This document shows positions 3,691 through 49,112 of a DNA stretch of 64,000 nt, one piece after another. The stretch is taken from positions 1 through 64,000 of the forward strand of contig NIVC01001045.1 in the NCBI GenBank assembly GCA_002269645.1, written 5' to 3'. The notes beneath the pieces are model-generated. The model saw only the letters and a program-made list of their open reading frames with translations, had not been told where the DNA came from and did no database searches. The position numbers and the translations under genes were made by a program. This DNA comes from Macrostomum lignano (lineage: Eukaryota). Numbering within the stretch: position 1 is the stretch's first letter; each line of letters starts with the position of its first letter.

Positions 3691-4181
3691 CCTATCTATA
3701 TAAAATATGTAAGCTTTTTGTAATCATTTTGTATCATCATTATCATGTATCATTTTGTAAGCTTCCTATGAATAAACTCATTTCTGTTATTATTTATTAG
3801 GCCTGACTTAACGTTTTTAGCATTTTTTAGATATAAAAAACAATATAAAAACAAGAAGTTATTAAAGAAATTATTAAATTCAGGCAAAATAAAAATAGAA
3901 AATGCAAAATAAACTTCTTTGTTTCAAGTCCCAAATGCTAGTTTAGGGCTAATAAACTAGAATGTTATTATTTTAATAAATGTAAATGTATTTTAATATA
4001 TAAATTTAGATTTGAGTTTTCTTAAATTAGTGTAGTCTCACATCTGTACTCATACAGTCAGTTTACAAACTGGAGCACAAAAGGTTAACTGCTTGGTGCC
4101 CTGCTTCCTTTCACATTTGATGCTGTTGTTGCAGTTTCTCAGAAGCACTATTATCAACTCTCTGTCTAAGCTGAAGCAGTC

Positions 4182-5870
4182 ATGACTCAATACACCGCCG
4201 CCAGTGTTAGGCAAAGCTTCATCGACTTCTTTGCCCAGAAGCACAAGCACACCTATGTGCACTCATCGTCGACTATTCCATATGACGATCCAACCCTGCT
4301 GTTTACCAATGCTGGCATGAACCAGTACAAGCCTATCTTCCTGGGCACAGCCGATCCCAACTCTGACATGGCCAAATGGACGAGGGCTGTTAATTCCCAA
4401 AAGTGCATTAGAGCAGGCGGCAAGCACAACGATTTAGACGATGTTGGTAAAGATGTTTATCATCACACTTTCTTTGAGATGCTGGGCAATTGGTCGTTTG
4501 GCGATTATTTCAAATTGGAAGCTTGCACCTGGGCCTGGGACCTGCTCACTAACGTCTGGGGCTTGCCCAGGGATCGTCTGTACGTCACTTATTTTGGCGG
4601 CAACGAGGCCCAGGGCCTGCCATCCGATGAGGAGGCTCGCGACATCTGGATCAGCTTGGGCCTGCCGCCTGACCGAGTGCTGCCATTCGGCATGAAGGAC
4701 AACTTCTGGGAGATGGGCGAGACTGGACCATGCGGTCCCTGCTCCGAGATTCACTTCGATCGGATTGGAGGCGGTAGAAATGCCGCGGATCTTGTCAACA
4801 TGGACGATCCGGACGTGTTGGAGATTTGGAATCTCGTATTTATCCAGTTTAATCGCGAGCCAGATGGCAACCTGAGATTGCTGCCTAATAAGCATATTGA
4901 TACCGGCATGGGAATGGAGCGAATTCTCTCTGTGCTTCAGGTGTGTTGAACATCTTTTTTGTGTCTTCTCGTAGTTGAAATGACTAAATTGACACAATCA
5001 TTTCTCACTTATTATTCCGTGCCACTAACCTTAGCTATCTTTGTCTAATTACGGTTTATCAATTTTCCCTGTAAATACCCTCCATGTCATCCCTGTAAAT
5101 ACCCTCCATGTCATCCCTGTAAATACCCTCAATGTCATCCCTGTAAATACCCTCCATGTCATCCCTGTAAATACCCTCAATGTCATCCCTGTAAATACCC
5201 TCCATGTCATCCCTGTAAATACCCTCAATGTCATCCCTGTAAATACCCTCCATGTCATCCCTGTAAATACCCTCCATGTCATCCCTGTAAATACCCCTAT
5301 GTCATCTCTTTAAATACCCCTATGTTATCCCTGTAAATACCCTCCATGTCATCCCTGTAAATACCCTCCATGTCATCCCTGTAAATACCCTTCATATCAT
5401 CCCTGTAAATACCCCTGTCATCTCTTTAAATACCCCGTCATCCTTGTCCCTCCATTCGAACCAAATTGTCTGCAGCCCATATGCATTACCCATCTATCTA
5501 GTCGATTCCACAACCCGCAGGGCCACCGATCCAACTACGACACCGACGCATTCCAACCGCTGTTCGCCGCCATCGAGAAGTTCACCGGCAGCCGGCCCTA
5601 TTCTGGCCGGGTGGGCGCCGAAGACACCGACGGAGTTGACATGGCCTACCGAGTGCTGGCCGATCACGCCAGGACGCTCACTATTGCGCTGAGCGACGGC
5701 GGCAGGCCAGATAACGCCGGTCGGGGCTACGTGTTGCGCAGGATTTTGCGCAGGGGCGTGCGTTACGCTGTTGAAAAGTTGCGGTCTCCGCCAGGACTGT
5801 TGGAGGCTCTGGTTGGTGAATTTGCTGCTTGGGATGTGTGTCGGGTCTCTATACTGTCCGCCTATCCTCC

Positions 5871-5914
<44 letters not shown>

Positions 5915-8900
5915 AGATAGATAGATCTCGCTTCGCTCGCTCTTTCTCGCTATCTACTATCTATAGCCAGGACCTGCACCGGAGCGGTTACGAAAATTAG
6001 ATTTCTCGGTAGTTGCACGTACTCTTTTGCACTACTTGAGTAGTCTGATTTTCGTTCGGCATGGCTGGTTCCAGCAGGTAGTTCCTCTGGATAAAAGCGC
6101 TTACCGCGCCCATTGGCTTTCCAGCTGCCTTAATCGTTTCCGGTGATCTTGTGTGCGTGCTTTCAGCTTGATTGGCTGCGGCAAGCAAGCTCGAAAGAGC
6201 TCGCTTCGCTCGCTCTTTCTCGCTATCTACTATCTATAGCCAGGACCTGCACCGGAGCGGTTACGAAAATTAGATTTCTCGGTAGTTGCACGTACTCTTT
6301 TGCACTACTTGAGTAGTCTGATTTTCGTTCGGCATGGCTGGTTCCAGCAGGTAGTTCCTCTGGATAAAAGCGCTTACCGCGCCCATTGGCTTTCCAGCTG
6401 CCTTAATCGTTTCCGGTGATCTTGTGTGCGTGCTTTCAGCTTGATTGGCTGCGGCAAGCAAGCTCGAAAGAGCTCGCTTCGCTCGCTCTTTCTCGCTATC
6501 TACTATCTATAGCCAGGACCTGCACCGGAGCGGTTACGAAAATTAGATTTCTCGGTAGTTGCACGTACTCTTTTGCACTACTTGAGTAGTCTGATTTTCG
6601 TTCGGCATGGCTGGTTCCAGCAGGTAGTTCCTCTGGATAAAAGCGCTTACCGCGCCCATTGGCTTTCCAGCTGCCTTAATCGTTTCCGGTGATCTTGTGT
6701 GCGTGCTTTCAGCTTGATTGGCTGCGGCAAGCAAGCTCGAAAGAGCTCGCTTCGCTCGCTCTTTCTCGCTATCTACTATCTATAGCCAGGACCTGCACCG
6801 GAGCGGTTACGAAAATTAGATTTCTCGGTAGTTGCACGTACTCTTTTGCACTACTTGAGTAGTCTGATTTTCGTTCGGCATGGCTGGTTCCAGCAGGTAG
6901 TTCCTCTGGATAAAAGCGCTTACCGCGCCCATTGGCTTTCCAGCTGCCTTAATCGTTTCCGGTGATCTTGTGTGCGTGCTTTCAGCTTGATTGGCTGCGG
7001 CAAGCAAGCTCGAAAGAGCTCGCTTCGCTCGCTCTTTCTCGCTATCTACTATCTATAGCCAGGACCTGCACCGGAGCGGTTACGAAAATTAGATTTCTCG
7101 GTAGTTGCACGTACTCTTTTGCACTACTTGAGTAGTCTGATTTTCGTTCGGCATGGCTGGTTCCAGCAGGTAGTTCCTCTGGATAAAAGCGCTTACCGCG
7201 CCCATTGGCTTTCCAGCTGCCTTAATCGTTTCCGGTGATCTTGTGTGCGTGCTTTCAGCTTGATTGGCTGCGGCAAGCAAGCTCGAAAGAGCTCGCTTCG
7301 CTCGCTCTTTCTCGCTATCTACTATCTATAGCCAGGACCTGCACCGGAGCGGTTACGAAAATTAGATTTCTCGGTAGTTGCACGTACTCTTTTGCACTAC
7401 TTGAGTAGTCTGATTTTCGTTCGGCATGGCTGGTTCCAGCAGGTAGTTCCTCTGGATAAAAGCGCTTACCGCGCCCATTGGCTTTCCAGCTGCCTTAATC
7501 GTTTCCGGTGATCTTGTGTGCGTGCTTTCAGCTTGATTGGCTGCGGCAAGCAAGCTCGAAAGAGCTCGCTTCGCTCGCTCTTTCTCGCTATCTACTATCT
7601 ATAGCCAGGACCTGCACCGGAGCGGTTACGAAAATTAGATTTCTCGGTAGTTGCACGTACTCTTTTGCACTACTTGAGTAGTCTGATTTTCGTTCGGCAT
7701 GGCTGGTTCCAGCAGGTAGTTCCTCTGGATAAAAGCGCTTACCGCGCCCATTGGCTTTCCAGCTGCCTTAATCGTTTCCGGTGATCTTGTGTGCGTGCTT
7801 TCAGCTTGATTGGCTGCGGCAAGCAAGCTCGAAAGAGCTCGCTTCGCTCGCTCTTTCTCGCTATCTACTATCTATAGCCAGGACCTGCACCGGAGCGGTT
7901 ACGAAAATTAGATTTCTCGGTAGTTGCACGTACTCTTTTGCACTACTTGAGTAGTCTGATTTTCGTTCGGCATGGCTGGTTCCAGCAGGTAGTTCCTCTG
8001 GATAAAAGCGCTTACCGCGCCCATTGGCTTTCCAGCTGCCTTAATCGTTTCCGGTGATCTTGTGTGCGTGCTTTCAGCTTGATTGGCTGCGGCAAGCAAG
8101 CTCGAAAGAGCTCGCTTCGCTCGCTCTTTCTCGCTATCTACTATCTATAGCCAGGACCTGCACCGGAGCGGTTACGAAAATTAGATTTCTCGGTAGTTGC
8201 ACGTACTCTTTTGCACTACTTGAGTAGTCTGATTTTCGTTCGGCATGGCTGGTTCCAGCAGGTAGTTCCTCTGGATAAAAGCGCTTACCGCGCCCATTGG
8301 CTTTCCAGCTGCCTTAATCGTTTCCGGTGATCTTGTGTGCGTGCTTTCAGCTTGATTGGCTGCGGCAAGCAAGCTCGAAAGAGCTCGCTTCGCTCGCTCT
8401 TTCTCGCTATCTACTATCTATAGCCAGGACCTGCACCGGAGCGGTTACGAAAATTAGATTTCTCGGTAGTTGCACGTACTCTTTTGCACTACTTGAGTAG
8501 TCTGATTTTCGTTCGGCATGGCTGGTTCCAGCAGGTAGTTCCTCTGGATAAAAGCGCTTACCGCGCCCATTGGCTTTCCAGCTGCCTTAATCGTTTCCGG
8601 TGATCTTGTGTGCGTGCTTTCAGCTTGATTGGCTGCGGCAAGCAAGCTCGAAAGAGCTCGCTTCGCTCGCTCTTTCTCGCTATCTACTATCTATAGCCAG
8701 GACCTGCACCGGAGCGGTTACGAAAATTAGATTTCTCGGTAGTTGCACGTACTCTTTTGCACTACTTGAGTAGTCTGATTTTCGTTCGGCATGGCTGGTT
8801 CCAGCAGGTAGTTCCTCTGGATAAAAGCGCTTACCGCGCCCATTGGCTTTCCAGCTGCCTTAATCGTTTCCGGTGATCTTGTGTGCGTGCTTTCAGCTTG

Positions 8901-11900
8901 ATTGGCTGCGGCAAGCAAGCTCGAAAGAGCTCGCTTCGCTCGCTCTTTCTCGCTATCTACTATCTATAGCCAGGACCTGCACCGGAGCGGTTACGAAAAT
9001 TAGATTTCTCGGTAGTTGCACGTACTCTTTTGCACTACTTGAGTAGTCTGATTTTCGTTCGGCATGGCTGGTTCCAGCAGGTAGTTCCTCTGGATAAAAG
9101 CGCTTACCGCGCCCATTGGCTTTCCAGCTGCCTTAATCGTTTCCGGTGATCTTGTGTGCGTGCTTTCAGCTTGATTGGCTGCGGCAAGCAAGCTCGAAAG
9201 AGCTCGCTTCGCTCGCTCTTTCTCGCTATCTACTATCTATAGCCAGGACCTGCACCGGAGCGGTTACGAAAATTAGATTTCTCGGTAGTTGCACGTACTC
9301 TTTTGCACTACTTGAGTAGTCTGATTTTCGTTCGGCATGGCTGGTTCCAGCAGGTAGTTCCTCTGGATAAAAGCGCTTACCGCGCCCATTGGCTTTCCAG
9401 CTGCCTTAATCGTTTCCGGTGATCTTGTGTGCGTGCTTTCAGCTTGATTGGCTGCGGCAAGCAAGCTCGAAAGAGCTCGCTTCGCTCGCTCTTTCTCGCT
9501 ATCTACTATCTATAGCCAGGACCTGCACCGGAGCGGTTACGAAAATTAGATTTCTCGGTAGTTGCACGTACTCTTTTGCACTACTTGAGTAGTCTGATTT
9601 TCGTTCGGCATGGCTGGTTCCAGCAGGTAGTTCCTCTGGATAAAAGCGCTTACCGCGCCCATTGGCTTTCCAGCTGCCTTAATCGTTTCCGGTGATCTTG
9701 TGTGCGTGCTTTCAGCTTGATTGGCTGCGGCAAGCAAGCTCGAAAGAGCTCGCTTCGCTCGCTCTTTCTCGCTATCTACTATCTATAGCCAGGACCTGCA
9801 CCGGAGCGGTTACGAAAATTAGATTTCTCGGTAGTTGCACGTACTCTTTTGCACTACTTGAGTAGTCTGATTTTCGTTCGGCATGGCTGGTTCCAGCAGG
9901 TAGTTCCTCTGGATAAAAGCGCTTACCGCGCCCATTGGCTTTCCAGCTGCCTTAATCGTTTCCGGTGATCTTGTGTGCGTGCTTTCAGCTTGATTGGCTG
10001 CGGCAAGCAAGCTCGAAAGAGCTCGCTTCGCTCGCTCTTTCTCGCTATCTACTATCTATAGCCAGGACCTGCACCGGAGCGGTTACGAAAATTAGATTTC
10101 TCGGTAGTTGCACGTACTCTTTTGCACTACTTGAGTAGTCTGATTTTCGTTCGGCATGGCTGGTTCCAGCAGGTAGTTCCTCTGGATAAAAGCGCTTACC
10201 GCGCCCATTGGCTTTCCAGCTGCCTTAATCGTTTCCGGTGATCTTGTGTGCGTGCTTTCAGCTTGATTGGCTGCGGCAAGCAAGCTCGAAAGAGCTCGCT
10301 TCGCTCGCTCTTTCTCGCTATCTACTATCTATAGCCAGGACCTGCACCGGAGCGGTTACGAAAATTAGATTTCTCGGTAGTTGCACGTACTCTTTTGCAC
10401 TACTTGAGTAGTCTGATTTTCGTTCGGCATGGCTGGTTCCAGCAGGTAGTTCCTCTGGATAAAAGCGCTTACCGCGCCCATTGGCTTTCCAGCTGCCTTA
10501 ATCGTTTCCGGTGATCTTGTGTGCGTGCTTTCAGCTTGATTGGCTGCGGCAAGCAAGCTCGAAAGAGCTCGCTTCGCTCGCTCTTTCTCGCTATCTACTA
10601 TCTATAGCCAGGACCTGCACCGGAGCGGTTACGAAAATTAGATTTCTCGGTAGTTGCACGTACTCTTTTGCACTACTTGAGTAGTCTGATTTTCGTTCGG
10701 CATGGCTGGTTCCAGCAGGTAGTTCCTCTGGATAAAAGCGCTTACCGCGCCCATTGGCTTTCCAGCTGCCTTAATCGTTTCCGGTGATCTTGTGTGCGTG
10801 CTTTCAGCTTGATTGGCTGCGGCAAGCAAGCTCGAAAGAGCTCGCTTCGCTCGCTCTTTCTCGCTATCTACTATCTATAGCCAGGACCTGCACCGGAGCG
10901 GTTACGAAAATTAGATTTCTCGGTAGTTGCACGTACTCTTTTGCACTACTTGAGTAGTCTGATTTTCGTTCGGCATGGCTGGTTCCAGCAGGTAGTTCCT
11001 CTGGATAAAAGCGCTTACCGCGCCCATTGGCTTTCCAGCTGCCTTAATCGTTTCCGGTGATCTTGTGTGCGTGCTTTCAGCTTGATTGGCTGCGGCAAGC
11101 AAGCTCGAAAGAGCTCGCTTCGCTCGCTCTTTCTCGCTATCTACTATCTATAGCCAGGACCTGCACCGGAGCGGTTACGAAAATTAGATTTCTCGGTAGT
11201 TGCACGTACTCTTTTGCACTACTTGAGTAGTCTGATTTTCGTTCGGCATGGCTGGTTCCAGCAGGTAGTTCCTCTGGATAAAAGCGCTTACCGCGCCCAT
11301 TGGCTTTCCAGCTGCCTTAATCGTTTCCGGTGATCTTGTGTGCGTGCTTTCAGCTTGATTGGCTGCGGCAAGCAAGCTCGAAAGAGCTCGCTTCGCTCGC
11401 TCTTTCTCGCTATCTACTATCTATAGCCAGGACCTGCACCGGAGCGGTTACGAAAATTAGATTTCTCGGTAGTTGCACGTACTCTTTTGCACTACTTGAG
11501 TAGTCTGATTTTCGTTCGGCATGGCTGGTTCCAGCAGGTAGTTCCTCTGGATAAAAGCGCTTACCGCGCCCATTGGCTTTCCAGCTGCCTTAATCGTTTC
11601 CGGTGATCTTGTGTGCGTGCTTTCAGCTTGATTGGCTGCGGCAAGCAAGCTCGAAAGAGCTCGCTTCGCTCGCTCTTTCTCGCTATCTACTATCTATAGC
11701 CAGGACCTGCACCGGAGCGGTTACGAAAATTAGATTTCTCGGTAGTTGCACGTACTCTTTTGCACTACTTGAGTAGTCTGATTTTCGTTCGGCATGGCTG
11801 GTTCCAGCAGGTAGTTCCTCTGGATAAAAGCGCTTACCGCGCCCATTGGCTTTCCAGCTGCCTTAATCGTTTCCGGTGATCTTGTGTGCGTGCTTTCAGC

Positions 11901-13327
11901 TTGATTGGCTGCGGCAAGCAAGCTCGAAAGAGCTCGCTTCGCTCGCTCTTTCTCGCTATCTACTATCTATAGCCAGGACCTGCACCGGAGCGGTTACGAA
12001 AATTAGATTTCTCGGTAGTTGCACGTACTCTTTTGCACTACTTGAGTAGTCTGATTTTCGTTCGGCATGGCTGGTTCCAGCAGGTAGTTCCTCTGGATAA
12101 AAGCGCTTACCGCGCCCATTGGCTTTCCAGCTGCCTTAATCGTTTCCGGTGATCTTGTGTGCGTGCTTTCAGCTTGATTGGCTGCGGCAAGCAAGCTCGA
12201 AAGAGCTCGCTTCGCTCGCTCTTTCTCGCTATCTACTATCTATAGCCAGGACCTGCACCGGAGCGGTTACGAAAATTAGATTTCTCGGTAGTTGCACGTA
12301 CTCTTTTGCACTACTTGAGTAGTCTGATTTTCGTTCGGCATGGCTGGTTCCAGCAGGTAGTTCCTCTGGATAAAAGCGCTTACCGCGCCCATTGGCTTTC
12401 CAGCTGCCTTAATCGTTTCCGGTGATCTTGTGTGCGTGCTTTCAGCTTGATTGGCTGCGGCAAGCAAGCTCGAAAGAGCTCGCTTCGCTCGCTCTTTCTC
12501 GCTATCTACTATCTATAGCCAGGACCTGCACCGGAGCGGTTACGAAAATTAGATTTCTCGGTAGTTGCACGTACTCTTTTGCACTACTTGAGTAGTCTGA
12601 TTTTCGTTCGGCATGGCTGGTTCCAGCAGGTAGTTCCTCTGGATAAAAGCGCTTACCGCGCCCATTGGCTTTCCAGCTGCCTTAATCGTTTCCGGTGATC
12701 TTGTGTGCGTGCTTTCAGCTTGATTGGCTGCGGCAAGCAAGCTCGAAAGAGCTCGCTTCGCTCGCTCTTTCTCGCTATCTACTATCTATAGCCAGGACCT
12801 GCACCGGAGCGGTTACGAAAATTAGATTTCTCGGTAGTTGCACGTACTCTTTTGCACTACTTGAGTAGTCTGATTTTCGTTCGGCATGGCTGGTTCCAGC
12901 AGGTAGTTCCTCTGGATAAAAGCGCTTACCGCGCCCATTGGCTTTCCAGCTGCCTTAATCGTTTCCGGTGATCTTGTGTGCGTGCTTTCAGCTTGATTGG
13001 CTGCGGCAAGCAAGCTCGAAAGAGCTCGCTTCGCTCGCTCTTTCTCGCTATCTACTATCTATAGCCAGGACCTGCACCGGAGCGGTTACGAAAATTAGAT
13101 TTCTCGGTAGTTGCACGTACTCTTTTGCACTACTTGAGTAGTCTGATTTTCGTTCGGCATGGCTGGTTCCAGCAGGTAGTTCCTCTGGATAAAAGCGCTT
13201 ACCGCGCCCATTGGCTTTCCAGCTGCCTTAATCGTTTCCGGTGATCTTGTGTGCGTGCTTTCAGCTTGATTGGCTGCGGCAAGCAAGCTCGAAAGAGCTC
13301 GCTTCGCTCGCTCTTTCTCGCTATCTA

Positions 13328-13394
<67 letters not shown>

Positions 13395-13478
13395 TCTGTC
13401 TATCTATCTATCTGTCTATCTATCTATCTATCTGTCTATCTATCTATCTATCTATCTGTCTATCTATCTATCTATCTG

Positions 13479-13517
<39 letters not shown>

Positions 13518-16500
13518 GTCTGTCTGTCTATCTATCTATCTGTCTATCTGTCTATCTATCTATCTATCTTCTATTATCTATCTGTATATCTATTTAGCTC
13601 ATACATGCGCAACCTCCAAAATTCGGTCGGCCGTGCGACTTAGTTTTAACAAAAAATGCGACGTAGTTTTTGGCTAAAAATGCGACTTACATGTAAAAAA
13701 AACCCTAAAGCAAAATTACCGCAACTTTGGGTAAACGGCAGGAGTAACTATGACTGTCTTATTAAGCTAAAATGCCTCGTCAGCTACTTAGTACTACTGC
13801 TTGGGTGTTTTTTCGGGTGGCCATTTTTGCGACTTCTTTGGTTGGCCGCCAAATCGGTCGGCCGGATCGGCCGACTCGGCCGACTGTTGCGCATGTATGA
13901 TTTAGCTAGCTATTTATCCAATACCCAATTAAATTTAAACCCAAGGTGGACGTTGTCTGCCAGTCGCTGGGCTCCGCATTTCCCGAGCTAAATCGCGACC
14001 CGGACACGGTGCGCGAGATCATCGCCGAGGAGGAGGCGCAGTTCCTCAAGACGCTCCGCCGGGGCCAGCGAGTGCTGGAGCGCACCCTGGCCAAGGTGCC
14101 AGCAGGTCAGCCTGTGCCTGGCGACGTTGTGTGGCGCCTGTACGACACCTACGGCTTTCCCACTGACCTGACCAAGCTCATGGCAGAGGAGCGCGGCCTG
14201 GCTATTGACGAGACCGGCTTCGAGGCCGCCAAGGAGGCTTCGCTGTTGGCCTCGCAGGCCGCCGGCGGCGGTGTCGGCGTCTCGGTTGATCTGGACGTTC
14301 ACGCACTGGCCGAGCTCAAGGACGGCATGGCCATCGCTCAGACTGACGATTCACCTAAGCTGACCTACACAACCGACAGTGACGGAGTCTACGCCTATCC
14401 AAATCGGATTAGCGCCACTATTAAAGCTATTCGCTATCGTCAGGCCTTTGTGGACTCGGTCCCATCCGGTGTCGAGTGCGGATTCGTACTGGACCGGACC
14501 TGCTTCTACGCTGAGCAGGGCGGCCAGATATTCGACGAAGGCGTGATGACTAAGACTGGCGAAGGTGCCGGCGACGATGCGGCCGAGTTTATGGTTAAGA
14601 ATTGTCAGGTAAATTTTTAATTAACAACCCTGATTTTTAATTAACAATCAGGTAATATTCAGTACTGTAGACTGTTGGGTTTTTAGCCCAGTGGTTAGAG
14701 CATCCGACCCACAATTGGAAGGTCGGGGGTTCGAATCTTCGACCCACTCTGAACAATTTACTCTGCATTGCTTCAGTTCACCCAGCTGTAAAATGGGTGC
14801 CAGCTGGGGTAATTGAAGGTGTGTGGCGACCCCCCCCCCAGTCATTGGACTGAACAGTCGTACGCAGCCTTCAGCCGTACACGCAGTAGCTGCGGCTGAG
14901 CTGTCGGTTGCACATCTAACCCAATTAGTGCAGGTGAAAACCAATTATTATTAGGTTAAGTAGAATTGACATTGATTCGTGCACGTTTATTCTGGTTAAT
15001 TATTTGGCTGGGAAATAAAACAAATTAATGAACAGCTCGCGTAGGTTAAGCTGAGTTTGCTTTGGTTAGTACGCATTCAGCGCAAAGTTGATTTTTAAGA
15101 ATTTGCTAGTTATAAAAAATTAATAATTAATTAAGCAGGCTTTATTAGCATTGTAAAAGTTAAGCAGAGTTTACCGCGGTTAGTGCGCAATAACTAAATA
15201 TTTTATTCAATCTATAACTAAGTATGCATTTATTATCATTGTTGTTACAATTAATTCCCAGGTACGCGGTGGCTACGTTATTCACGTTGGCACAACCGAA
15301 GGCGAATTCAAAGTTGGCGACGAACTAATTCTCTCTGTTGATATGCAACGGCGCAAACCGGTGATGCAGAATCATACGGGTACTCACGTGCTGAACTACG
15401 CTCTACGCCAGGTGCTCGGAGTTGATGCCGATCAGAAAGGCTCTCTAGTTGCCCCTGATCGGCTGCGATTTGATTTCGCTTGCAAAGCCGCCATGACTCA
15501 GGAGCAGATTGGCCAGGTTGAGAATATTGTTAACGAGGTTGTAAGCAAACGGCAGCCTGTCTATGCTGCTATGGCTTCGCTGGCTGAGGCTAAAGCTGTT
15601 CAGGTATGGCGGGTTTGCTATGAAGAATTAAGATCCCTAATCCCATGTTTGGGATCCCTAATCCCATATTTTAAATCTCTAATCCCATTTTTGAGATCCC
15701 TAATCCCATATTTGAGATCCCTAATCCCATATTTGAGATCCGCAATCCCATATTTGAAATCAGCAATCCCATATTTGAGATCCCTAATCCCATATTTGAG
15801 ATCCGCAATCCCATATTTGAAATCAGCAATCCCATATTTGAGATCCGCAATCCCATATTTAAAATCTCTAATCCCATATTTGAGATCCCCAATCCCATAT
15901 TTAAAATCTCTAATCCCATATTTGAGATCCCTAATCCCATATTTGAGATACACAATCTCATATTTGAGATCCGCAATCCCATATTTTAGATACGCAATCC
16001 CATATTTGAGATCCGCAATCCCATATTTGAGATCCGCAATCCCATACTTGAAATCCCCAATCCCATATCTGAGATCCCTAATCCCATATTTGGGATGCAT
16101 GCTCAATCCCATATTTGAGATGCATGCTCAAGCCCATATTTGAGATCCCTCAATCCCATATTTGAGATCCTAAGTCCCAGGTTTGAGATCCCAAATGCCG
16201 TACTCGTATTTAATATCCTCGATGCCATATTTGGTATCCTCAAATATAATGTTTAATAATGTTTAATAATATTTCCCAATCGTCTACCCCACTTTGCTAG
16301 GGTCTTCGCGCCGTATTTGGAGAAGTCTACCCGGATCCAGTTCGCGTTGTCAGCGTTGGCGTCGAGGTCGACAAACTGTTGGCAGATCCCAACGGTCCGG
16401 CCGGCTCTTCAACTTCTGTCGAGTTCTGCGGCGGCACCCATTTGCACAATGCTGGACACATTGGCCAGATGGCCATCATCTCCGAAGAGGCCATCGCTAA

Positions 16501-18888
16501 GGGTATTCGACGGATTGTAGCCGTTACTGGCACAGAGGCGTCTCGGTGAGTTGACTGGCACGTGACCAAATTCCGATATTCCCAGATTCTCAAAACAGGA
16601 CGTCGGTACTACCAAATCCTTAATTTGGGATGCCAATATTCCCAGATCCTCAAATTGGAATGCCAATACTCCGAGATCCTCAAATGGGATGCCAATACTC
16701 CCAGATCCTCAAATTGGGATGCAATACTCCCAGATCCTCAAATTTGGATGCCAATGCTCCCAGATCCTCAAATTGGGATTCCATACTCCCAGATCCTCAA
16801 ATTGGGATGCCAATGCTCCCAGATCCTCAAATTGGGATTCCATACTCCCAGATCCTCAAATTGGGATGCCAATGCTCCCAGATCCTCAAATTGGGATGAC
16901 AATACTCCCAGATCCTCAAATTGGGATGCCAATACTCCCAGATCCGCAAATTAGGATGCCATTACTCCCAGATCCTCAAATTGGGATTCCATACTCCCAG
17001 ATCCTCAAATTGGGATGCCCATTCTCCCAGATCCTCAAATTGGGATGCCAATGCTCCCACATCCTCAAATTGGGATGCCAATACTCCCAGATCCTCAAAT
17101 TGGGATGCCATCACTCCTTGATCATCAAATTGGGATTCCATACTCCCAGATCCTTAAATTGGGATTCCATACTCCCAGATCCTCAAATTGGGATTCCATA
17201 CTCCCAGATCCTGAAATTGAGATTCCATACTCCCAGATCCTCAAATTGGGATTCCATACTCCCAGATCCCAGATTACACATAATGCCTTGTATTTTACAA
17301 CAAATTTCCAATAAAAAACAACTCAACAGAGCCCGACATTCTGCCGACCTGCTCGAAGCCGACGTGACCAGCCTAGAAGGTCTGGCGTCAGCTTGCACAG
17401 ACGTAGCGGAGGCGCGCGGCCTCGCCCGTAGAATAGTCGATCTTAGCACCCTAGTCGCCCAGTCCACCACTCCGTCGGTTCGTCGTGAGGCCATGCGTCG
17501 CCGGCTAGCGGACGCTAAGCGCCGACTAGACGATCTGGATCGCAGTAAGAAGGCCGCCCAGGCCAACCAGATGATGGAGGAGGCCAAGCAATTGAGCGCC
17601 AAGGCTGCTTCTGGTGGCGGCGCCAGTCCGCCAGCTTTTCTAGTGCACGCCTTCGATTCTGAGGGCGGAGCTAAAGCGGTTAATACGGCGCTTAAACAGC
17701 TGTCTAAAGACTGCCCGGAGACTGCGTTCCTCTGTCTGAGCGTTGACGCCGCCGCTGGGAAGGTATGGTTCAATTCGAATAGATGGATTCACAGGTTTTT
17801 TTTATTAATAACTAGGCAAATAGATTTAAAGAAAAGACAGGTATAGGTAAGGTTAATATCTGAGTAAATAGATTAATTGTTATCTGAGTGGATAGATTGA
17901 TATCTGAGTAGATAAATTAATATCTGAGTAGATAGATAGATTGATATATGAGTAGATAGATTGATTGATATCTGAGTAGATAGATATTGATATCTGAGTA
18001 GATAGATTATCTGAGTAGATTGATTGATTGATATATGAGTAGATAGATTGATTGATATCTGAGTAGATAGATATTGATATCTGAGTAGATAGATTATCTG
18101 AGTAGATTGATTGATTGATATCTGAGTAGATAGATTATCTGAGTAGATAGATTGATTGATATCTGAGTAGATAGATTATCTGAGTAGATAGATTATCTGA
18201 GTAGATAGATTATCTGAGTAGATAGATTATCTGAGTAGATAGATTGATTGATATCTGAGTAGATAGATTATCTGAGTAGATAGATTATCTGAGTAGATAG
18301 ATTATCTGAGTAGATAGATTATCTGAGTAGATAGATTATCTGAGTAGATAGATTATCTGAGTAGATAGATTATCTGAGTAGATAGATTATCTGAGTAGAT
18401 AGATTATCTGAGTAGATTGATTGATTGATATCTGAGTAGATAGATTATCTGAGTAGATAGATTGATTGATATCTGAGTAGATAATATATCCAGTACTCGT
18501 AGAAAGATTGACATATATGTAGATCATAGGTATCTAGAAATATAGGTTCTCGGATATCTAAAAAAATATATTTTTGAGTATCTGGGTAGACAGGTTCATG
18601 GGTATCTGAATAGATGCACAAATTTATAGAAAAATATATTTAAAAATAATATCCTCAAGCTCACTTCTCTGTCCGTCGCTCTCGCAGGTGGTCTGCCTAG
18701 CCCAGGCTCCCAAATCCGCAATCGATCGCGGCCTGAAAGCTAACGAATGGATCGGCCACGTGTCGCCAGCCATCGACGGTCGCGGCGGCGGTCGAGACAA
18801 TGCCGCCCAGACTGCTGGCGGCAAGGTTGACGGAATCGCCGAGGCCAAAAAATTGGCTGTGGAATTCGCCAAGGCTAAACTGGGCTGA
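4182..18888 (+). CDS. AARS1: Alanyl-tRNA synthetase, cytosolic type; 7 coding exons: 4182-4940, 5521-5811, 13946-14608, 15262-15603, 16301-16545, 17330-17762, 18688-18888
   Basis: All six introns are GT-AG with consistent phases. The joined protein follows eukaryotic AlaRS without large gaps: [81 protein letters not shown], editing-domain HTGTH and EFCGGTH, C-terminal [11 protein letters not shown], then stop at 18886-18888. Confidence 0.97.
5067..5440. repeat. 24-bp minisatellite (CCCTGTAAATACCCTCCATGTCAT)n in AlaRS intron 1
   Basis: Directly visible; gives the 8-aa periodic ORFs at 5041-5313. Confidence 0.95.
5927..13335. repeat. Tandem array of about 27.1 x 273-bp units in AlaRS intron 2, flanked by (TATC)n tracts
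   Basis: 27 identical 63-aa minus-strand ORFs spaced exactly 273 bp apart (5997 to 13095). The array starts and ends with CTCGCTTCGCTCGCTCTTTCTCGCTATCTACTATCTAT. Confidence 0.99.
13336..13570. repeat. (TATC/TGTC)n microsatellite; a shorter (TATC)n tract lies at about 5870-5913
   Basis: Directly visible. Confidence 0.95.
13600..13899. mobile_element. 300-bp hAT-type MITE
   Basis: Perfect 14-bp TIR CATACATGCGCAAC (13600-13613) / GTTGCGCATGTATG (13886-13899), with 8-bp TSD ATTTAGCT at 13592-13599 and 13900-13907. An 8-bp TSD is characteristic of hAT. Confidence 0.9.
14677..14935 (+). mobile_element. tRNA-derived SINE in AlaRS intron 3
   Basis: A-box TAGCCCAGTGGTTAGAGC, anticodon-arm-like TCCGA-CCCACAA-TTGGA and B-box GGTTCGAATC, but acceptor and T stems are broken. 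The head is followed by a body with TTCACCCAGCTGTAAAATGGGT, which resembles a conserved SINE central domain (from memory, unverified). Confidence 0.7.
15629..16190. repeat. 21-bp minisatellite (ATCCCATATTTGAGATCCCTA and variants) in AlaRS intron 4
   Basis: Directly visible; 7-aa periodic read-through LRSLIPY. Confidence 0.95.
16575..17270. repeat. 29/30-bp minisatellite (ACTCCCAGATCCTCAAATTGGGATGCCAAT) in AlaRS intron 5
   Basis: Directly visible. Confidence 0.95.
17855..18490. repeat. GATA-derived compound repeat (TCTGAGTAGATAGATTA, about 17 bp) in AlaRS intron 6
   Basis: Directly visible. Confidence 0.9.
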
Positions 18889-21592: not shown

Positions 21593-21808
21593 AATCTTTT
21601 GCATTTGAATGTTTTCTTTATTGTTTATAAAACAATATTTTTCTTCTGCTTTTCATTTCTGTTCTTTTTCGATTTGAAATTAGTAATTATATAATTAGTT
21701 TAGACTAATCTACTAGCTATAGCAATTGTAAGGTCCTAAATAATAAAAAAATATTATTTAAATAACTTAATTTAAAAATAATATTTTGAAGATCATTAAG
21801 CAATCACA

Positions 21809-23531
21809 ATGTCTACTGAGGACAATGCCGCCAAGCAGTTGAGCGATTCTGAGCAGCCATCTGAGCAGCAGCAGCAGCAGCAGCAGGTATCGCCAGGCAA
21901 ACAAGATGAGAATCAACAACAGGCCTCTCCAACAATGCCTGGCGCTAACAATAGCACGGCTGGCCAGCAGCAGAAGCAGTACGCCAACAATTATAACAGC
22001 GGCAACGATCGTCAATTGACCGCTCGCGAACGCGCTCGAATGGAAGAGATCGCCGTGTTGGAGGCTGAACTGGCCGAACTAAACGGAGACGCGTTGCCGA
22101 ACGCTCGCCGATTGCTTGAATTAGAAATCCACCGACTGCGCTGGGGCGTCACGGAAATGGTCGACCTGTTAAACAATCGCCGTTGCAAGATTCGCAGCAA
22201 AGTGCTCATACCGCAGGACCAATTTCCTGGATTTAATTTTGTTGGCAAATTGTTAGGCCAAGGCGGAGCTAGTCTGAGGAAACTGCAGGAGGAGAGCAAC
22301 GTCAAGATGTCCATTCTAGGCGCCGGTTCAATGCGGAACGATCGCAGAGAGCAGGAGTGTCTGGAGACTGGCGAGGCCAAGTATCAGCATTTGAAGCAGA
22401 CCTTGCACCTGCAGATTGACTGCCTGGCCGATCCCCCCGAGGCCTATTATCGGATTGGGCACGCATTGGCCAAGGTGACCAGTCCGCTGGCTGACTCACT
22501 GACTGACTGACCCACTTGACCCACTTGACTGACTCACTGACTGACTCACTGACTGCCTGACTGACTGACTGACTGGCTCACTGACTGACTGACTGGCTCA
22601 CTGACTGACTGACTGACTGACTGACTGACTGACTGACTGACTGCCTGACTGACTGACTGACTGACTGACTGACTGACTGACTGACTGACTGACTGACTGA
22701 CTGACCCACTGCCTGACTCACTGACTGACTGACCCACTGACTGGCTCACTGATTGACCCACTGCTTGGCTCACTGACTGACTGACTCACTAACTGACTCA
22801 CTGACTGACTGTCAAATGCATTGTAAAAATTGCAACTCCATCCCCAGGTAAAGGAGGCCATGACGCCCGACCCGAACGAGCTGGCCAACTTCTACAACAA
22901 CCCGATGGCGCCTCATCCGCACATGCCTCCGCATCACTACGGCCCCGGCGGTTACGGTCCGGCGCATCATCATCCACATCACATGCCGCCGCCACCACTG
23001 CCGCCGCAGCCGCAGCCTCCGATGTCTCATCCGCCACCACCTCATCATCATCCGCATGCTTACACGACTGGCCCGCCGCCACAGCACCACCAGCAGCAGG
23101 TGCCGCCACCGCCGCCTCTGCCGCCGCAGCAGCAGCAACAGCAGGGCGGCCGCAACAACCGCCTAAGTGGTCGTGTTGGCGGCGGACTGGCTGGTTACAA
23201 TCCTCCAATCGGGGCGCAGCAGCCGTCTGGTCAAATGCGCGGCGGCGGTCGCGGCGGCCGCAACAACGGCGGAATGCGCTCGAGCACAGGCGGCAGCGCC
23301 AACGGTCAGCAGCAGCAACAGCAGCTGGCTCCTAACGCCGCAGGCGACGCCGGGCATATTAACAATAGTGAGGGCATTAATAATGGTGGCGGAAATGGCG
23401 CCGGCAAAGCCGGTGGTAGCAACGGTAATTGGCATCGAGGTGCTGCCCCGCGCGGCCAGCAGTATTATCAGCAGCAGCAGCAGCAGCAAGCTCGCGGTGC
23501 CGGCGGCAGCTACACACAGGCTACCGCTTAG
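21809..23531 (+). CDS. KHDRBS: STAR-family KH-domain RNA-binding protein, Sam68/SLM (KHDRBS)-like; exons 21809-22474 and 22848-23531
   Basis: QUA1-like helix pair (LEAELAEL...ARRLLELEIHRL); maxi-KH KVLIPQDQFPGFNFVGKLLGQGG...KMSILGAGSMR...YQHL...EAYYRIGHAL, matching the Sam68 pattern; phase-0 GT-AG intron; Pro/Gln-rich tail with RGG motifs. Confidence 0.9.
22488..22811. repeat. (GACT)n microsatellite filling the STAR-gene intron
   Basis: Directly visible. Confidence 0.95.
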
Positions 23532-26192: not shown

Positions 26193-27521
26193 TCATTTCT
26201 TTCCTAGAAGCGCAGTCTCCGCCGGCAGCAGTTTCCCGGAAAGGCGGCCCTCAGCGGCGGCCTGCAGCAGCCGCAGCGCCTGCCGAACGTCGTGGTGACT
26301 CACCTGAGCAGGCAGCCGTCGGATTCGGATGACTTCTTCGTCATCGCCTTCCTGACTGACCAGCAGCTGCAGTCTGTCGGCAAACCGGGCCTCCAGTCGG
26401 ACAGTCGCCGAGGTCAAGTCGAAGCTGCTCTGTCGCCGAACGAGGCCCAACTGGATGAAGCGGATGGCGGCGGGGTCGTCCTCGCTGTTGAACAGCGCGC
26501 TGATCTGCTTCAGTGCGCCGTCAGCTGTCGCTGTCACGGCCGCTTCGATCACGGCGACTCTGAGAGGCCCGGCGAGAGACTTCGGCAGCCCGAGCGAGCG
26601 GGTGAACACGGAGGCGAAGGCGGTTGCCATGGAGACTGGGATGCGGCGCAGAGTCTGGCTGGTAGCGGAAATGGCCAGGCGGTCGAATCCAGTTCTGACC
26701 AGCTCCACCAGCGTGGCGTTGCCGCCGTCCTCCGAGGTTGCAGCCGTTGGGCCTGCGGTCGTCGAAACCCCCAGCTGCAGTTCTTCCACCACCTCCGGCG
26801 CCTCGGGAGCATCGCTGGCGACCTCCTCGGCGGATCGGCGGCTGCGCAGCAGGCCGGAACTGGCGGCCACCCGACTTGCCGCGGCAGCGATGGCGAAGTG
26901 CCTCAGCCCAGCCTCCACCTGCCGCAGCTCCTCGGCCGTGAGGCCCCGCGGCACCTGCTGCGTCCAGGAGCGGCACCTCCTGATGAACCACCGGCGCTTG
27001 CAGCTTCGCATCGGCACAGGCGTTGTCTTGGCAACCAGCTGGGCGGTGGCGACGCTGTGCACGATGCCGAACTCAACGCTGACATCGTCGAGGCGCCGGC
27101 CAGCCCCGACGAAGGTCTCGTAGTGGCCGCGGCCGACCAGGGCGCTCACGGTGAAAGAGAACGTGTGGAAGGAGACGGAGCGAGCGAAGGCCAGGGCAGC
27201 CAGGCGGTTCGCCACCTCCTGAGGCAGTCCGCGAGACCTGATGGCCTGCTGCAACTCCTGCCGGGCCACCGAGCCCTGAACCAGTCGACTGTTGGCCCGC
27301 GGTGCCACCAGCAGACACGTCGGGCAGACCACTCCGCCAGGCAGGGGCGAAGCCAGCTGCCCCAGCTGACTGCGGAGCGCGCTGGATACTCCGGACTGAG
27401 CTGGGCGACTCAGCGCTCTGAAGGATGCGGGCTGAGGGCCGAAGCGCTTGGCAGACAGGGACTGAAGGCAGCAGCAGCTGCTCACGAGCGCAAGCAGCAG
27501 AAGATTTTCGCTGCAGAGCAT
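26193..27521 (-). CDS. Intronless predicted secreted protein of unknown family (about 442 aa from the second Met)
   Basis: Long non-repetitive GC-rich ORF. The ATG at 27521 is followed by a signal-peptide-like MLCSENLLLLALVSSCCCLQSLSA. No family recognised. Confidence 0.75.
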   Translation of the reverse strand: MLCSENLLLLALVSSCCCLQSLSAKRFGPQPASFRALSRPAQSGVSSALRSQLGQLASPLPGGVVCPTCLLVAPRANSRLVQGSVARQELQQAIRSRGLPQEVANRLAALAFARSVSFHTFSFTVSALVGRGHYETFVGAGRRLDDVSVEFGIVHSVATAQLVAKTTPVPMRSCKRRWFIRRCRSWTQQVPRGLTAEELRQVEAGLRHFAIAAAASRVAASSGLLRSRRSAEEVASDAPEAPEVVEELQLGVSTTAGPTAATSEDGGNATLVELVRTGFDRLAISATSQTLRRIPVSMATAFASVFTRSLGLPKSLAGPLRVAVIEAAVTATADGALKQISALFNSEDDPAAIRFIQLGLVRRQSSFDLTSATVRLEARFADRLQLLVSQEGDDEEVIRIRRLPAQVSHHDVRQALRLLQAAAEGRLSGKLLPAETALLGKK

Positions 27522-27949
27522 TCTGTTACTTGACAGGACAGCAGATTTATCTAGAGAATACTGGGTTGTTGTTGCCATGGGCCTCCTGCAGGGCTGCCGT
27601 ATTTATAGTATCAGAAATCACCTTGACATGGACCTCTGCGGGGGCCACCGCTTTCACATCTCTTTCCACTTTTTTCCTGCGAATGCTTCTATTTCTGTTT
27701 CCTGTGCTTGGCCTTCCGAATAAGGTGTTGCCGATTTCCGTGTGTGCCCGGAGTACCAAATGTGACTCAAATGCACCTTGAGCACCTGGTCGGCTGCAGA
27801 GCTTTCCGACTGATAAGACTCTTGCAGCCCACGCACTGGAACAAGTGGTTATAACTATTTTTAATTAGAATTCCCTTGTAGGTTGCCTAGACTTGACTTT
27901 GCGTTTTCTGAAGCTGGTAGCTGGTGAGGGAGAGGGGAGACAGCAGATA

Positions 27950-35365: not shown

Positions 35366-35822
<457 letters not shown>

Positions 35823-35885: not shown

Positions 35886-36052
35886 CACTGAGCACAAACG
35901 GAACTCCCGAGCAGTGTTCCAATGCCCATCGAATCCCATGCAGGTTCTTATAAGTCGGATTGTGGTAATGATCTTTAAAATTTGTCACCACCAAATCGCC
36001 GAACTCGTCGCTCTGCTTGTTAAAGTCGTCGATTTTCGTCCTGATCGGCGGA
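35886..36052 (-). pseudogene. Orphan exon of a beta-1,3-galactosyltransferase (GT31 family)
   Basis: After acceptor CCTTGCAG: SADQDENRRL, then a one-base frameshift to KQSDEFGDLVVTNFKDHYHNPTYKNLHGIRWALEHCSGVPFVL (GT31 D-x-Y-x-N-L-T-x-K motif with L>P). No DxD motif and no flanking exons found. Confidence 0.7.
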
Positions 36053-36059
36053 CTGCAAG

Positions 36060-48590: not shown

Positions 48591-49112
<522 letters not shown>

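What the first reader, a model, noticed from the sequence alone, without database searches (positions are those of the whole stretch)
5927..13335. 7.4-kb array of 27 apparently identical 273-bp hairpin-rich units inside an essential gene's intron
Seen: unlike the degenerate minisatellites elsewhere in the window, the units show no visible divergence and keep their CpGs. Each unit has an 8-bp stem GAAAGAGC/GCTCTTTC around TCGCTTCGCTC, followed by a TCTACTATCTATAG start, further hairpins (ACTACT-TG-AGTAGT; CCAGCAGG...CCTCTGG) and two minus-strand CCAAT boxes. Inference: a very recent rolling-circle concatemer of a non-autonomous Helitron/Helentron-like element (the GAGCGAAGCGAG core recalls such termini from memory; a canonical CTRR end is missing), or a tandem small-RNA locus. 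Consensus polishing could also exaggerate the identity.
Basis: partly seen in the sequence, partly recalled or inferred. Interest (0 to 1): 0.7.

Follow-up and report, generated by a model that had tools for sequence, protein, structure and literature searches.

The report
Perfect 273-bp repeat in flatworm intron
A 7.4-kb block of 27 letter-for-letter identical 273-bp non-coding units sits in an intron of the alanyl-tRNA synthetase gene of a Macrostomum flatworm; it is most likely a very young ordinary tandem repeat in a repeat-rich genome, but each unit carries a strong RNA hairpin, so a small-RNA locus cannot be ruled out.

Summary
From 5927 to 13335 the sequence is exactly periodic: 27 identical 273-bp units plus 38 bp. 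The array is non-coding and CpG-rich. It lies in intron 2 of an intact cytosolic alanyl-tRNA synthetase (AlaRS) gene, inside a (CTAT)n microsatellite. The neighbouring KH/STAR protein is 86% identical to a Macrostomum lignano protein, so the host is a macrostomid flatworm. Simple and tandem repeats make up about 15% of the M. lignano genome, and 31% of this window outside the array.

The Helitron reading is not supported. There is no CTRR end, the array edges do not fall on element-like termini, no other copy occurs in the window, and no Rep/helicase was found.

I raised and tested a spliced-leader (SL) RNA gene reading (GU donor in a stem, Hydra-type Sm motif, 3' hairpin). It fails: the published, genus-conserved Macrostomum leader is absent.

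Each unit does carry a 26-bp-paired hairpin. It is much more stable on the strand that is sense to AlaRS (-27.9 vs -18.8 kcal/mol), and a TATA-like motif lies 28 nt upstream.

Best reading (about 0.5): a very recently amplified or homogenised, functionally inert macrosatellite. Main rival (about 0.25): a tandem hairpin small-RNA locus. No external copy of the unit was found.

The parts
5927..13335 (.). The array: 27 identical 273-bp units plus a 38-bp partial unit (7,409 bp)
   Evidence: Exact periodicity and unit identity. Stop codons in all six frames.
5927..6199 (+). First unit in array phase (CTCGCTTCGC...CGAAAGAG). 50.5% GC, 19 CpG.
5990..6055 (+). Central hairpin of the first unit (repeats every 273 bp): ACGAAAAUUAGAUUUCUCGGUAGUUGCA - 10-nt loop - UGCACUACUUGAGUAGUCUGAUUUUCGU. 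It has 26 pairs (14 AU, 9 GC, 3 GU).
   Evidence: On the + strand -27.9 kcal/mol, z -7.45. On the - strand -18.8 kcal/mol, z -4.0. In GC-matched background only 2-3 loci in 56 kb (both strands) are as stable.
5960..5966 (+). TATA-like TCTATAG. The TATA starts 28 nt upstream of the hairpin base. It lies inside the microsatellite-like CTATCTACTATCTATAG.
   Evidence: Read from the sequence. Promoter function is inferred, not shown.
6009..6015 (+). Donor-like G|GUAGUU inside the hairpin stem. A second GGTAGTT lies at 6078-6084.
   Evidence: Read from the sequence. SL-style filter.
6047..6054 (+). Sm-type motif GAUUUUCG, 38 nt after the donor-like GU. In the MFE fold it is base-paired with the 5' arm of the hairpin.
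   Evidence: Hydra SL RNAs use the same motif type (PMC7986045). The motif occurs at 0.35 per kb per strand in the background.
6071..6090 (+). Small 3' hairpin CCAGCAGG-UAGUU-CCUCUGG
   Evidence: On its own it is not significant (z -1.0 for the surrounding 53 nt).
6112..6116 (-). First CCAAT box (ATTGG on the + strand; context AAGCCAATGGGCG on the - strand)
6171..6175 (-). Second CCAAT box (context CAGCCAATCAAGC on the - strand, a good NF-Y-type Y-box)
6193..6219 (+). Hairpin with 8-bp stem, GAAAGAGC-TCGCTTCGCTC-GCTCTTTC. It spans the unit boundary in array phase.
   Evidence: I4.: -10.8 kcal/mol, z -2.1, weak.
5871..5926 (.). Left flank: (CTAT)11 followed by the inverted AGATAGATAGAT, a short palindromic junction, then the array starts abruptly at CTCGC
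13336..13593 (.). Right flank: (CTAT/CTGT) of about 65 copies. It continues directly from the unit's own ...CTATCTACTATCTAT, so this junction has microhomology.
5812..13945 (+). Host intron 2 of cytosolic alanyl-tRNA synthetase (donor CTG|GTTGGT, acceptor cccaag|GTGGAC). Without the array and microsatellites it would be about 0.4-0.7 kb.

Best explanation
This is a very young, or very recently homogenised, tandem repeat (macrosatellite) of a 273-bp non-coding unit. It lies in a spliced-out intron of the AlaRS gene of a Macrostomum flatworm, a genome unusually prone to tandem repeats.

How it arose (inferred). A single 273-bp segment became established at a long (CTAT)n microsatellite and was amplified to 27.14 head-to-tail copies. 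The amplification could have been repeated replication slippage or unequal sister-chromatid exchange. Alternatively it could have been one rolling-circle-type synthesis or the capture of a small circular template at a break in the microsatellite. One junction shows microhomology to CTAT. The other carries a 12-bp inverted filler, as expected from end-joining repair.

Timing (inferred). All copies are identical, so the last common copy is recent, and gene conversion or unequal exchange may still be homogenising the array.

Effect (inferred). The array is removed with the intron. It therefore does not damage the essential host gene and needs no function of its own. A by-product is that every AlaRS pre-mRNA carries 27 copies of a stable sense-strand hairpin.

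Shown: the structure, the perfect identity, the position, the non-coding nature, the host lineage, and the absence of Helitron and SL-RNA hallmarks.
For: - Exact periodicity and identity of all 27 units.
- No open frame.
- No Rfam family, ribozyme or tRNA in the unit.
- The host is Macrostomum. Simple and tandem repeats are about 15% of the M. lignano genome (PMC5730564). In this window 31% of the sequence outside the array is tandem repeat, in 26 arrays.
- The array is embedded in a (CTAT)n tract, and the unit itself ends in CTATCTACTATCTAT.
- The AlaRS exons are intact and collinear around it.
- No trace of the unit in two metagenome scans, one viral scan, four literature sequence searches, two exact ORF look-ups, or a peptide search of 1.84 billion representatives. 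It is therefore not a widespread conserved element.
- Hairpins of comparable stability occur elsewhere in the window without any array.
Against: - It is an outlier among the window's arrays. Its unit is more than 3.5 times longer than any other, and it is the only array at 100% identity while the others are at 78-97%.
- It is CpG-island-like: 7 CpG per 100 bp, o/e about 1.07.
- The central hairpin is highly non-random (z -7.45). All three of its transition-type mismatches are G.U on the strand that is sense to the host gene.
- A TATA-like motif lies 28 nt upstream of the hairpin base, and two Y-boxes lie further upstream.

These features are what a small-RNA transcription unit would show, and an inert repeat does not need them. 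No reads, transcripts or related genomes could be examined.
Confidence: 0.5

Rival explanations
1. A tandem hairpin small-RNA locus (miRNA-like or hpRNA/endo-siRNA-like). Each unit encodes one hairpin of about 66 nt. The hairpins are transcribed either as part of the AlaRS intron (same strand) or from a promoter in each unit (TATA-like motif at -28, two Y-boxes upstream). Dicer, with or without Drosha, would cut them into duplexes of about 22 nt. The predicted arms are AUUAGAUUUCUCGGUAGUUGCA and UGCACUACUUGAGUAGUCUGAU. Twenty-seven identical copies would give a high dose.
For: - Hairpin at -27.9 kcal/mol, z -7.45. It has 26 pairs over an arm of about 31 nt, and a 10-nt loop.
- It is 9 kcal/mol more stable on the + strand, which is the sense strand of the host gene, because of 3 G.U pairs.
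- It is rare in GC-matched background.
- The TATA-like motif is 28 nt upstream of the hairpin base.
- The unit has CpG-island-like composition.
- Precedent: Drosophila hp-CG4068 has 20 tandem hairpins made from one transcript, with copy number differing between species. D. simulans has a cluster of 13 nearly identical tandem hpRNAs (PMC10317233).
Against: - No match to any Rfam miRNA or other RNA family, even at E<=10.
- No expression data.
- The helix does not continue as a simple basal stem below the hairpin.
- About 200 bp of each unit has no role in this model.
- No complementary target was found in the window.
- The strand bias rests on only three positions (p about 0.125).
- Dyad symmetries are common in ordinary satellites.
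- I picked out the features after seeing the sequence.
Confidence: 0.25
2. The repeat is real, but its perfection or its length is an assembly product. Consensus or short-read polishing erased differences between copies, or the assembler mis-estimated the copy number within a microsatellite-flanked repeat.
For: - Zero differences over 7.4 kb is unusual.
- Both flanks are microsatellites, which are error-prone.
- Published Macrostomum assemblies were built from noisy long reads plus short-read polishing (PMC5730564; Pilon is cited in PMC10468722). It is not known which assembly this window comes from.
Against: - Twenty-six other arrays in the same window keep 3-22% inter-copy differences, so the pipeline did not homogenise repeats in general.
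- At 7.4 kb the array can be spanned by ordinary long reads.
- The flanking exons are collinear and intact.
Confidence: 0.12
3. A head-to-tail concatemer of a non-autonomous Helitron/Helentron, made by rolling-circle transposition.
For: - The array has 27.14 rounds with an extra 5' portion of the unit at the right end, as read-through rolling-circle synthesis would give.
- The left junction can be read as A|TC.
- Imperfect hairpins lie 8 nt before the unit-phase end and 18 nt before the right edge of the array.
Against: - No CTRR at either candidate 3' end.
- The left edge falls inside the loop of the supposed terminal hairpin.
- No TIRs of Helentron type.
- No other copy or fragment in 56.6 kb.
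- No Rep or helicase domain in the ORFs tested.
- The similarity of the GAGCGAAGCGAG 'core' to Helitron termini is a recollection, not a test.
Confidence: 0.05
4. An array of spliced-leader RNA genes, or of another Sm-class small nuclear RNA. The transcript would have a 19-23-nt exon (..ACGAAAAUUAGAUUUCUCG), a GU donor in stem I, the Sm site GAUUUUCG and a 3' hairpin. This was my own hypothesis during the analysis.
For: - The + strand passes a SLIDR-style filter: donor in a stem, an Sm motif 20-60 nt downstream, and a 3' hairpin. In the background 5 loci per 112.5 kb pass it, and none of those has an upstream TATA.
- The Sm motif is the same type as in Hydra SL RNAs (PMC7986045).
- Tandem arrays homogenised by concerted evolution are typical of SL-RNA genes (PMC12582326; PMC4664967).
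- The host lineage does use SL trans-splicing.
Against: - Macrostomum uses a single 35-nt leader, CGGTCTCTTACTGCGAAGACTCAATTTATTGCATG, from a 109-nt SL RNA with donor GTAAG. It is conserved in three species (PMC8629364; PMC10468722).
- That leader is absent from the unit and from the whole window.
- The Sm-type motif is fully base-paired in the predicted fold.
- That motif is common, at about 0.1 expected per unit per strand.
- The candidate leader occurs in no paper searched.
Confidence: 0.03

Closest known systems
Minisatellite and macrosatellite arrays of Macrostomum genomes (simple and tandem repeats are about 15% of M. lignano; PMC5730564)
   Same: Head-to-tail non-coding repeats in intronic or intergenic DNA of the same lineage. 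This window alone holds 26 other arrays. The array is associated with microsatellites.
   Different: The unit is far longer: 273 bp against 76 bp or less in this window. Copy identity is perfect, against 78-97%. The composition is CpG-rich, and the unit has an internal hairpin with strong strand bias.
Tandem hairpin-RNA clusters such as Drosophila hp-CG4068 (20 tandem copies from one transcript) and the D. simulans hp-tHMG cluster (13 nearly identical copies; PMC10317233)
   Same: Many (nearly) identical hairpin-bearing units head to tail within one transcription unit. They evolve fast in copy number and are lineage-specific, with no homologues elsewhere.
   Different: Here no small RNAs, no Dicer dependence and no target gene are known. 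The hairpin is short (26 pairs), and most of each unit lies outside it. The host is a flatworm, where such loci have not been described as far as I could find.
Spliced-leader RNA gene arrays. Examples: the Schistosoma mansoni cluster of about 110 genes (PMC7986045), copepod arrays (PMC4664967), and the 264-bp Ciona repeat (that figure is from memory, not checked here).
   Same: Short tandem units kept identical by concerted evolution. In form, the unit also has a GU donor in a stem, an Sm-type motif and a 3' hairpin.
   Different: The exon is not the host's leader, and the Sm-type motif is paired in the predicted fold. It is not a member.
Helitron/Helentron concatemers and Helentron-borne satellites
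   Same: A tandem array with perfect copies and a non-integer number of rounds. Hairpins lie near the candidate ends.
   Different: No TC...CTRR or TIR termini, no dispersed copies in view, and no RepHel. The left edge of the array lies inside a hairpin loop.
Ribozyme-bearing satellites and retrozymes (for example the schistosome Sm-alpha hammerhead repeats; recalled from memory)
   Same: Flatworm lineage. Tandem units of about 300 bp with RNA structure.
   Different: No hammerhead or other self-cleaving ribozyme model matches the unit, even at E<=10.

Membership tests
Helitron / Helentron | Defined termini: 5'-TC and 3'-CTRR (Helitron), or short asymmetric terminal inverted repeats (Helentron), at the ends of the element | tested here: not met
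   The right edge of the array is ...CTATCTACTATCTAT and the unit-phase 3' end is ...CGAAAGAG. CTRR occurs only at internal positions 119, 139 and 161. No terminal inverted repeat joins the two edges.
Helitron / Helentron | Subterminal hairpin about 10-12 nt upstream of the 3' end | tested here: inconclusive
   An 8-bp stem ends 18 nt before the right edge of the array. An imperfect 10-bp stem ends 8 nt before the unit-phase end. Neither is followed by CTRR. The left edge of the array cuts the first hairpin's loop.
Helitron / Helentron | Dispersed copies inserted at AT or TT sites without target duplication, and an autonomous RepHel partner in the genome | not testable with these tools
   Only 64 kb of the host is available. 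No other copy longer than 18 bp in the window. No Rep/helicase domain in 8 ORFs tested.
Spliced-leader RNA gene | The 5' exon is the leader actually found on the host's mRNAs | tested here: not met
   The published Macrostomum SL (35 nt) is absent from the unit and the window at up to 3 mismatches and by short-word BLAST.
Spliced-leader RNA gene | GU donor directly after a 16-50-nt exon, lying in stem-loop I | tested here: met
   CUCG|GUAGUU lies within the hairpin stem. This is a match of form only.
Spliced-leader RNA gene | Single-stranded Sm site between two stem-loops, 20-60 nt after the donor | tested here: inconclusive
   GAUUUUCG lies 38 nt after the donor and is followed by a small hairpin. 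In the MFE and centroid folds it is paired with the 5' arm. The motif is common in the background.
miRNA / hpRNA tandem cluster | Stable hairpin on the transcribed strand | tested here: met
   z -7.45 on the + strand, which is sense to AlaRS, against -4.0 on the - strand.
miRNA / hpRNA tandem cluster | Discrete duplexes of about 21-23 nt with 2-nt overhangs, dependent on Dicer/Drosha | not testable with these tools
miRNA / hpRNA tandem cluster | Homology to a known miRNA family, or complementarity to a target gene | tested here: not met
   No Rfam hit in the unit at E<=10. No antisense match in the window. Genome-wide targets are not testable.
Satellite / macrosatellite DNA | Head-to-tail repeats of constant period, non-coding | tested here: met
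   Exact 273-bp period over 7,409 bp. Stops in all six frames.
Satellite / macrosatellite DNA | Further arrays or high copy number elsewhere in the genome (satellite in the strict sense) | not testable with these tools
   The host genome is not available. No copies in public collections that could be searched.
Ribozyme satellite / retrozyme | Self-cleaving ribozyme core in each unit | tested here: not met
   No hammerhead, HDV-like, twister or other model matched more than three consecutive units at E<=10.

The most novel reading that the evidence does not exclude
The array is a lineage-specific tandem small-RNA factory of a flatworm. It holds 27 identical hairpin genes, each with its own CpG-island-like promoter module (Y-boxes and a TATA-like box). 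They are nested, in sense orientation, in the intron of a highly expressed housekeeping gene. They would yield one dominant miRNA- or siRNA-like species at high dose, in the manner of Drosophila tandem hpRNA clusters.
Probability: 0.25. Interest if true: 0.55.

Novelty: new member of a known kind. Interest (0 to 1): 0.3.

Why it matters
If it is only a young macrosatellite, it is a clean snapshot of how a long-unit tandem array is born at a microsatellite. The junctions are still legible, and it sits in one of the most tandem-repeat-rich animal genomes used as a laboratory model. It would also make a handy polymorphic marker.

If the hairpins are processed, it would be the first tandem hairpin small-RNA cluster described in a macrostomid flatworm. 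It would also be an example of a housekeeping-gene intron being used as a high-output small-RNA host.

Either way, the Helitron label should not be propagated. The SL-RNA-like appearance is a useful warning too: motif-based SL filters can be passed by unrelated hairpin repeats.

Tried and rejected
1. Spliced-leader RNA gene array. I rejected it once the host was identified as Macrostomum and its published, conserved SL proved absent. The leader candidates also matched no chaetognath SL, no copepod SL and no paper.
2. Known RNA families, ribozymes and tRNA: none in the unit.
3. Protein coding: stops in all frames.
4. Homologous arrays elsewhere: nothing found in two metagenome scans, one viral scan, four literature sequence searches, two exact ORF look-ups, or a peptide search of 1.84 billion representatives.
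5. Orthologous intron in M. lignano, approached through the neighbouring KH gene: that protein's contig is not on record, and a more distant homologue's contig is not syntenic.
6. Raw folding energy as evidence: rejected as uninformative, because 4.5% of windows in this repeat-rich DNA fold as well. I replaced it with a GC-matched comparison.
7. Acceptor-like sites upstream of the AlaRS and KH start codons as evidence about trans-splicing: not diagnostic.
8. The 12-mer AAGCCAATGGGC shared with the 76-bp minisatellite at 61.2-62.0 kb: about 1-2 such matches are expected by chance.
9. Host identification from AlaRS failed, because the protein is too conserved (best hits 76-78% and 54%). A literature search for the SINE-like element also failed.

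Full report
**The observation.** Tandem Repeats Finder reports a single array at 5923-13335 with period 273 and 27.2 copies. A strict test, s[i]=s[i+273], holds without exception from 5927 to 13062. The array is therefore 5927-13335, 7,409 bp = 27 x 273 + 38, and all 27 units are identical. That includes two CCAAT boxes on the minus strand, 54 in the array and none on the plus strand. All six frames contain stops, so the array is non-coding. The unit is 50.5% GC with 19 CpG. Its CpG o/e is 1.06-1.09, against 0.68 for the rest of the window and a median near 0.4 for the 26 other tandem arrays. Those other arrays have units of 76 bp or less and 78-97% identity. This array is a clear outlier, and the assembly evidently does not homogenise repeats as a rule.

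**Context.** The flanking ORFs encode a cytosolic alanyl-tRNA synthetase (AlaRS). Homologues map collinearly to 4185-4940, 5518 to about 5811, about 13946-14611, 15235-15627, 16301-16546 and onward. The array therefore lies in intron 2 (about 5812-13945; donor CTG|GTTGGT, acceptor cccaag|GTGGAC) of an apparently intact gene, on the sense strand.

On the left, the array is preceded by (CTAT)11 and an inverted AGATAGATAGAT, and it starts abruptly at CTCGC, inside the loop of the unit's first small hairpin. On the right, the last partial unit ends in ...CTATCTACTATCTAT and runs straight into about 65 CTAT/CTGT repeats. The array is thus embedded in one microsatellite. One junction shows microhomology and the other has a short palindromic filler. 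No other copy or fragment longer than 18 bp of the unit exists in the remaining 56.6 kb.

**Host.** AlaRS is too conserved to place the organism. The best identities were 76-78% for exon 1 and 54% for exon 3. The neighbouring KH/STAR gene (21809-22510 onward) is 86% identical over its full length to a Macrostomum lignano protein, and the next hits are at 60-62%. The window therefore comes from a macrostomid flatworm, either M. lignano (a paralogue) or a congener. That genome is known for an unusually high load of simple and tandem repeats, about 15% (PMC5730564). This fits the 31% tandem-repeat content of this window outside the array.

**What the unit contains.** The dominant feature is a central hairpin at 5990-6055 in the first unit. 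It has 26 pairs (14 AU, 9 GC, 3 GU) and a 10-nt loop. As RNA it folds at -27.9 kcal/mol (z -7.45) on the + strand but only -18.8 kcal/mol (z -4.0) on the - strand. All three transition-type imperfections are G.U on the + strand.

Raw stability is not rare in this repeat-rich DNA: 4.5% of 70-nt windows do as well, mostly in GC-rich palindromic minisatellites. Among GC-matched windows, however, only 2-3 independent loci in 56 kb (both strands) reach it.

A TATA-like TCTATAG lies 28 nt upstream of the hairpin base, but it is part of the microsatellite-like CTATCTACTATCTATAG. Two Y-boxes lie about 90 and 150 nt upstream of the next unit's hairpin. The other small hairpins are not individually significant. 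No Rfam family matches the unit even at E<=10, including miRNAs, snRNAs, 5S and self-cleaving ribozymes. ARAGORN finds no tRNA.

**The Helitron reading.** The defining termini are missing. No CTRR lies at the right edge of the array or at the unit-phase end, and the only CTRR tetramers are internal. There are no terminal inverted repeats of Helentron type. The left edge cuts a hairpin loop rather than coinciding with an element end. No dispersed copy and no Rep/helicase domain is in view. Unequal exchange gives the same shape.

**The spliced-leader (SL) RNA reading (my own).** The + strand looks like an SL RNA in form. It has a 19-23-nt exon, a GU donor inside a stem, GAUUUUCG 38 nt downstream, and then a 3' hairpin. 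Hydra SL RNAs use exactly this kind of Sm site (PMC7986045). Tandem arrays kept uniform by concerted evolution are typical of SL-RNA genes (PMC12582326; PMC4664967). A SLIDR-style filter that I defined is passed by 5 loci in 112.5 kb of background, none of them with an upstream TATA, and by the unit's + strand.

Once the host was known, the hypothesis could be tested properly. Macrostomum uses one 35-nt leader, CGGTCTCTTACTGCGAAGACTCAATTTATTGCATG. It comes from a 109-nt SL RNA with donor GTAAG, present in eight copies in M. lignano (PMC8629364). It is highly conserved in M. cliftonense and M. hystrix (PMC10468722). It is absent from the unit and from the whole window. The Sm-type motif is also fully paired in the predicted fold, and about 0.1 such motifs are expected per unit per strand. 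I therefore reject membership. The episode shows that motif-based SL filters can be passed by an unrelated hairpin repeat.

**What remains.** Two readings fit.

(a) An inert, very young or actively homogenised macrosatellite. This has the higher prior in this genome, needs no function, and is harmless because it is spliced out.

(b) A tandem hairpin small-RNA locus. It would be transcribed with the AlaRS intron, or from a promoter in each unit, and processed into small RNAs. There is a precedent in Drosophila tandem hpRNA clusters: 20 copies of hp-CG4068 from one transcript, with variable copy number between species, and 13 nearly identical hpRNAs in D. simulans (PMC10317233). The strand-biased hairpin, its sense orientation, the CpG-island-like composition and the perfect identity favour (b). 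None of them is decisive, and I selected them after seeing the sequence.

I put (a) at about 0.5 and (b) at about 0.25. An assembly-inflated version of (a) gets about 0.12, Helitron about 0.05 and SL or another Sm-class RNA about 0.03.

**External evidence.** No copy of the unit or of its hairpin was found anywhere. The searches covered JGI metagenomes, IMG/VR, the open literature, gene calls of public assemblies and 1.84 billion protein representatives searched with the longest unit-derived peptide. The orthologous intron of M. lignano could not be reached. The question of dispersed monomers, transcripts and true copy number therefore stays open and needs the host's own reads and genome.

**Verdict.** The array is a new member of a known kind and of modest interest, unless small-RNA data show that the hairpins are processed.

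Noticed in passing
window 14677-14746 (+): A tRNA-like sequence: Rfam tRNA at 33.5 bits, just above the gathering score, but ARAGORN negative. A conserved-looking tail follows it (...TTCACCCAGCTGTAAAATGGGTGCC...). It looks like the head of a tRNA-derived SINE inside AlaRS intron 3.
   Followed up: partly
window 36052-37964: Arrays of 21- and 28-bp units (GGCGCCAAAGCTACTGCAGGG and relatives) switch orientation near 36766 and 37480. They form large perfect palindromes, and 70-nt windows there fold at -50 to -58 kcal/mol.
   Followed up: no
whole window: Twenty-six tandem arrays besides the finding cover about 31% of the remaining sequence. Very long, pure tetranucleotide tracts of the same CTAT/TAGA family recur at 5871, 13321, 35366-35822 (114 copies, 100% pure) and 48591-49111 (130 copies).
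   Followed up: partly
window 58418-58473 (+) and 2298-2339: Two isolated, near-perfect hairpins outside any array. One has a stem of about 24 bp (AGGGACTACTTAACAACT...AGTTGTTAAGTAGTCCT). The other is a 14-bp palindrome containing GCCAATGG. They are possible MITE-like or foldback remnants.
   Followed up: no
window 61242-62045 vs the unit: The 76-bp minisatellite shares the 12-mer AAGCCAATGGGC with the minus strand of the 273-bp unit. GCCAATGG(G) also occurs in the 2304 palindrome. About 1-2 such matches are expected by chance.
   Followed up: partly
window 47107-48033 (+): A 308-aa ORF with an RNase H domain (Pfam E 1.8e-12) and a Cys-rich tail. It looks like a remnant of a non-LTR retrotransposon.
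   Followed up: partly
window 26193-27578: A GC-rich (about 61%) block with long ORFs on both strands (461 aa on -, 413 aa on +). There is no Pfam domain, and no exact match is on record. It is unclear whether either ORF is a real gene.
   Followed up: partly
window 21809-23531 (+), 30509-31012 (+), 62092-62478 (+): Neighbouring genes. There is a Sam68/STAR-type KH protein (86% identical to a Macrostomum lignano protein, which identified the host). There is also an exon resembling DNase I by eye, whose only Pfam match (Exo_endo_phos, 18.6 bits) is below the 24.5-bit cut-off, and a Slowpoke-like K+ channel RCK exon.
   Followed up: partly
window 4120-4181 and 21780-21808: Acceptor-like sites lie shortly upstream of the AlaRS start codon (gttgttgcag|tttctcag|) and the KH start codon (attttgaag|). 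They could be trans-splice acceptors, as expected for conserved genes in Macrostomum, or ordinary 5'-UTR intron acceptors.
   Followed up: no
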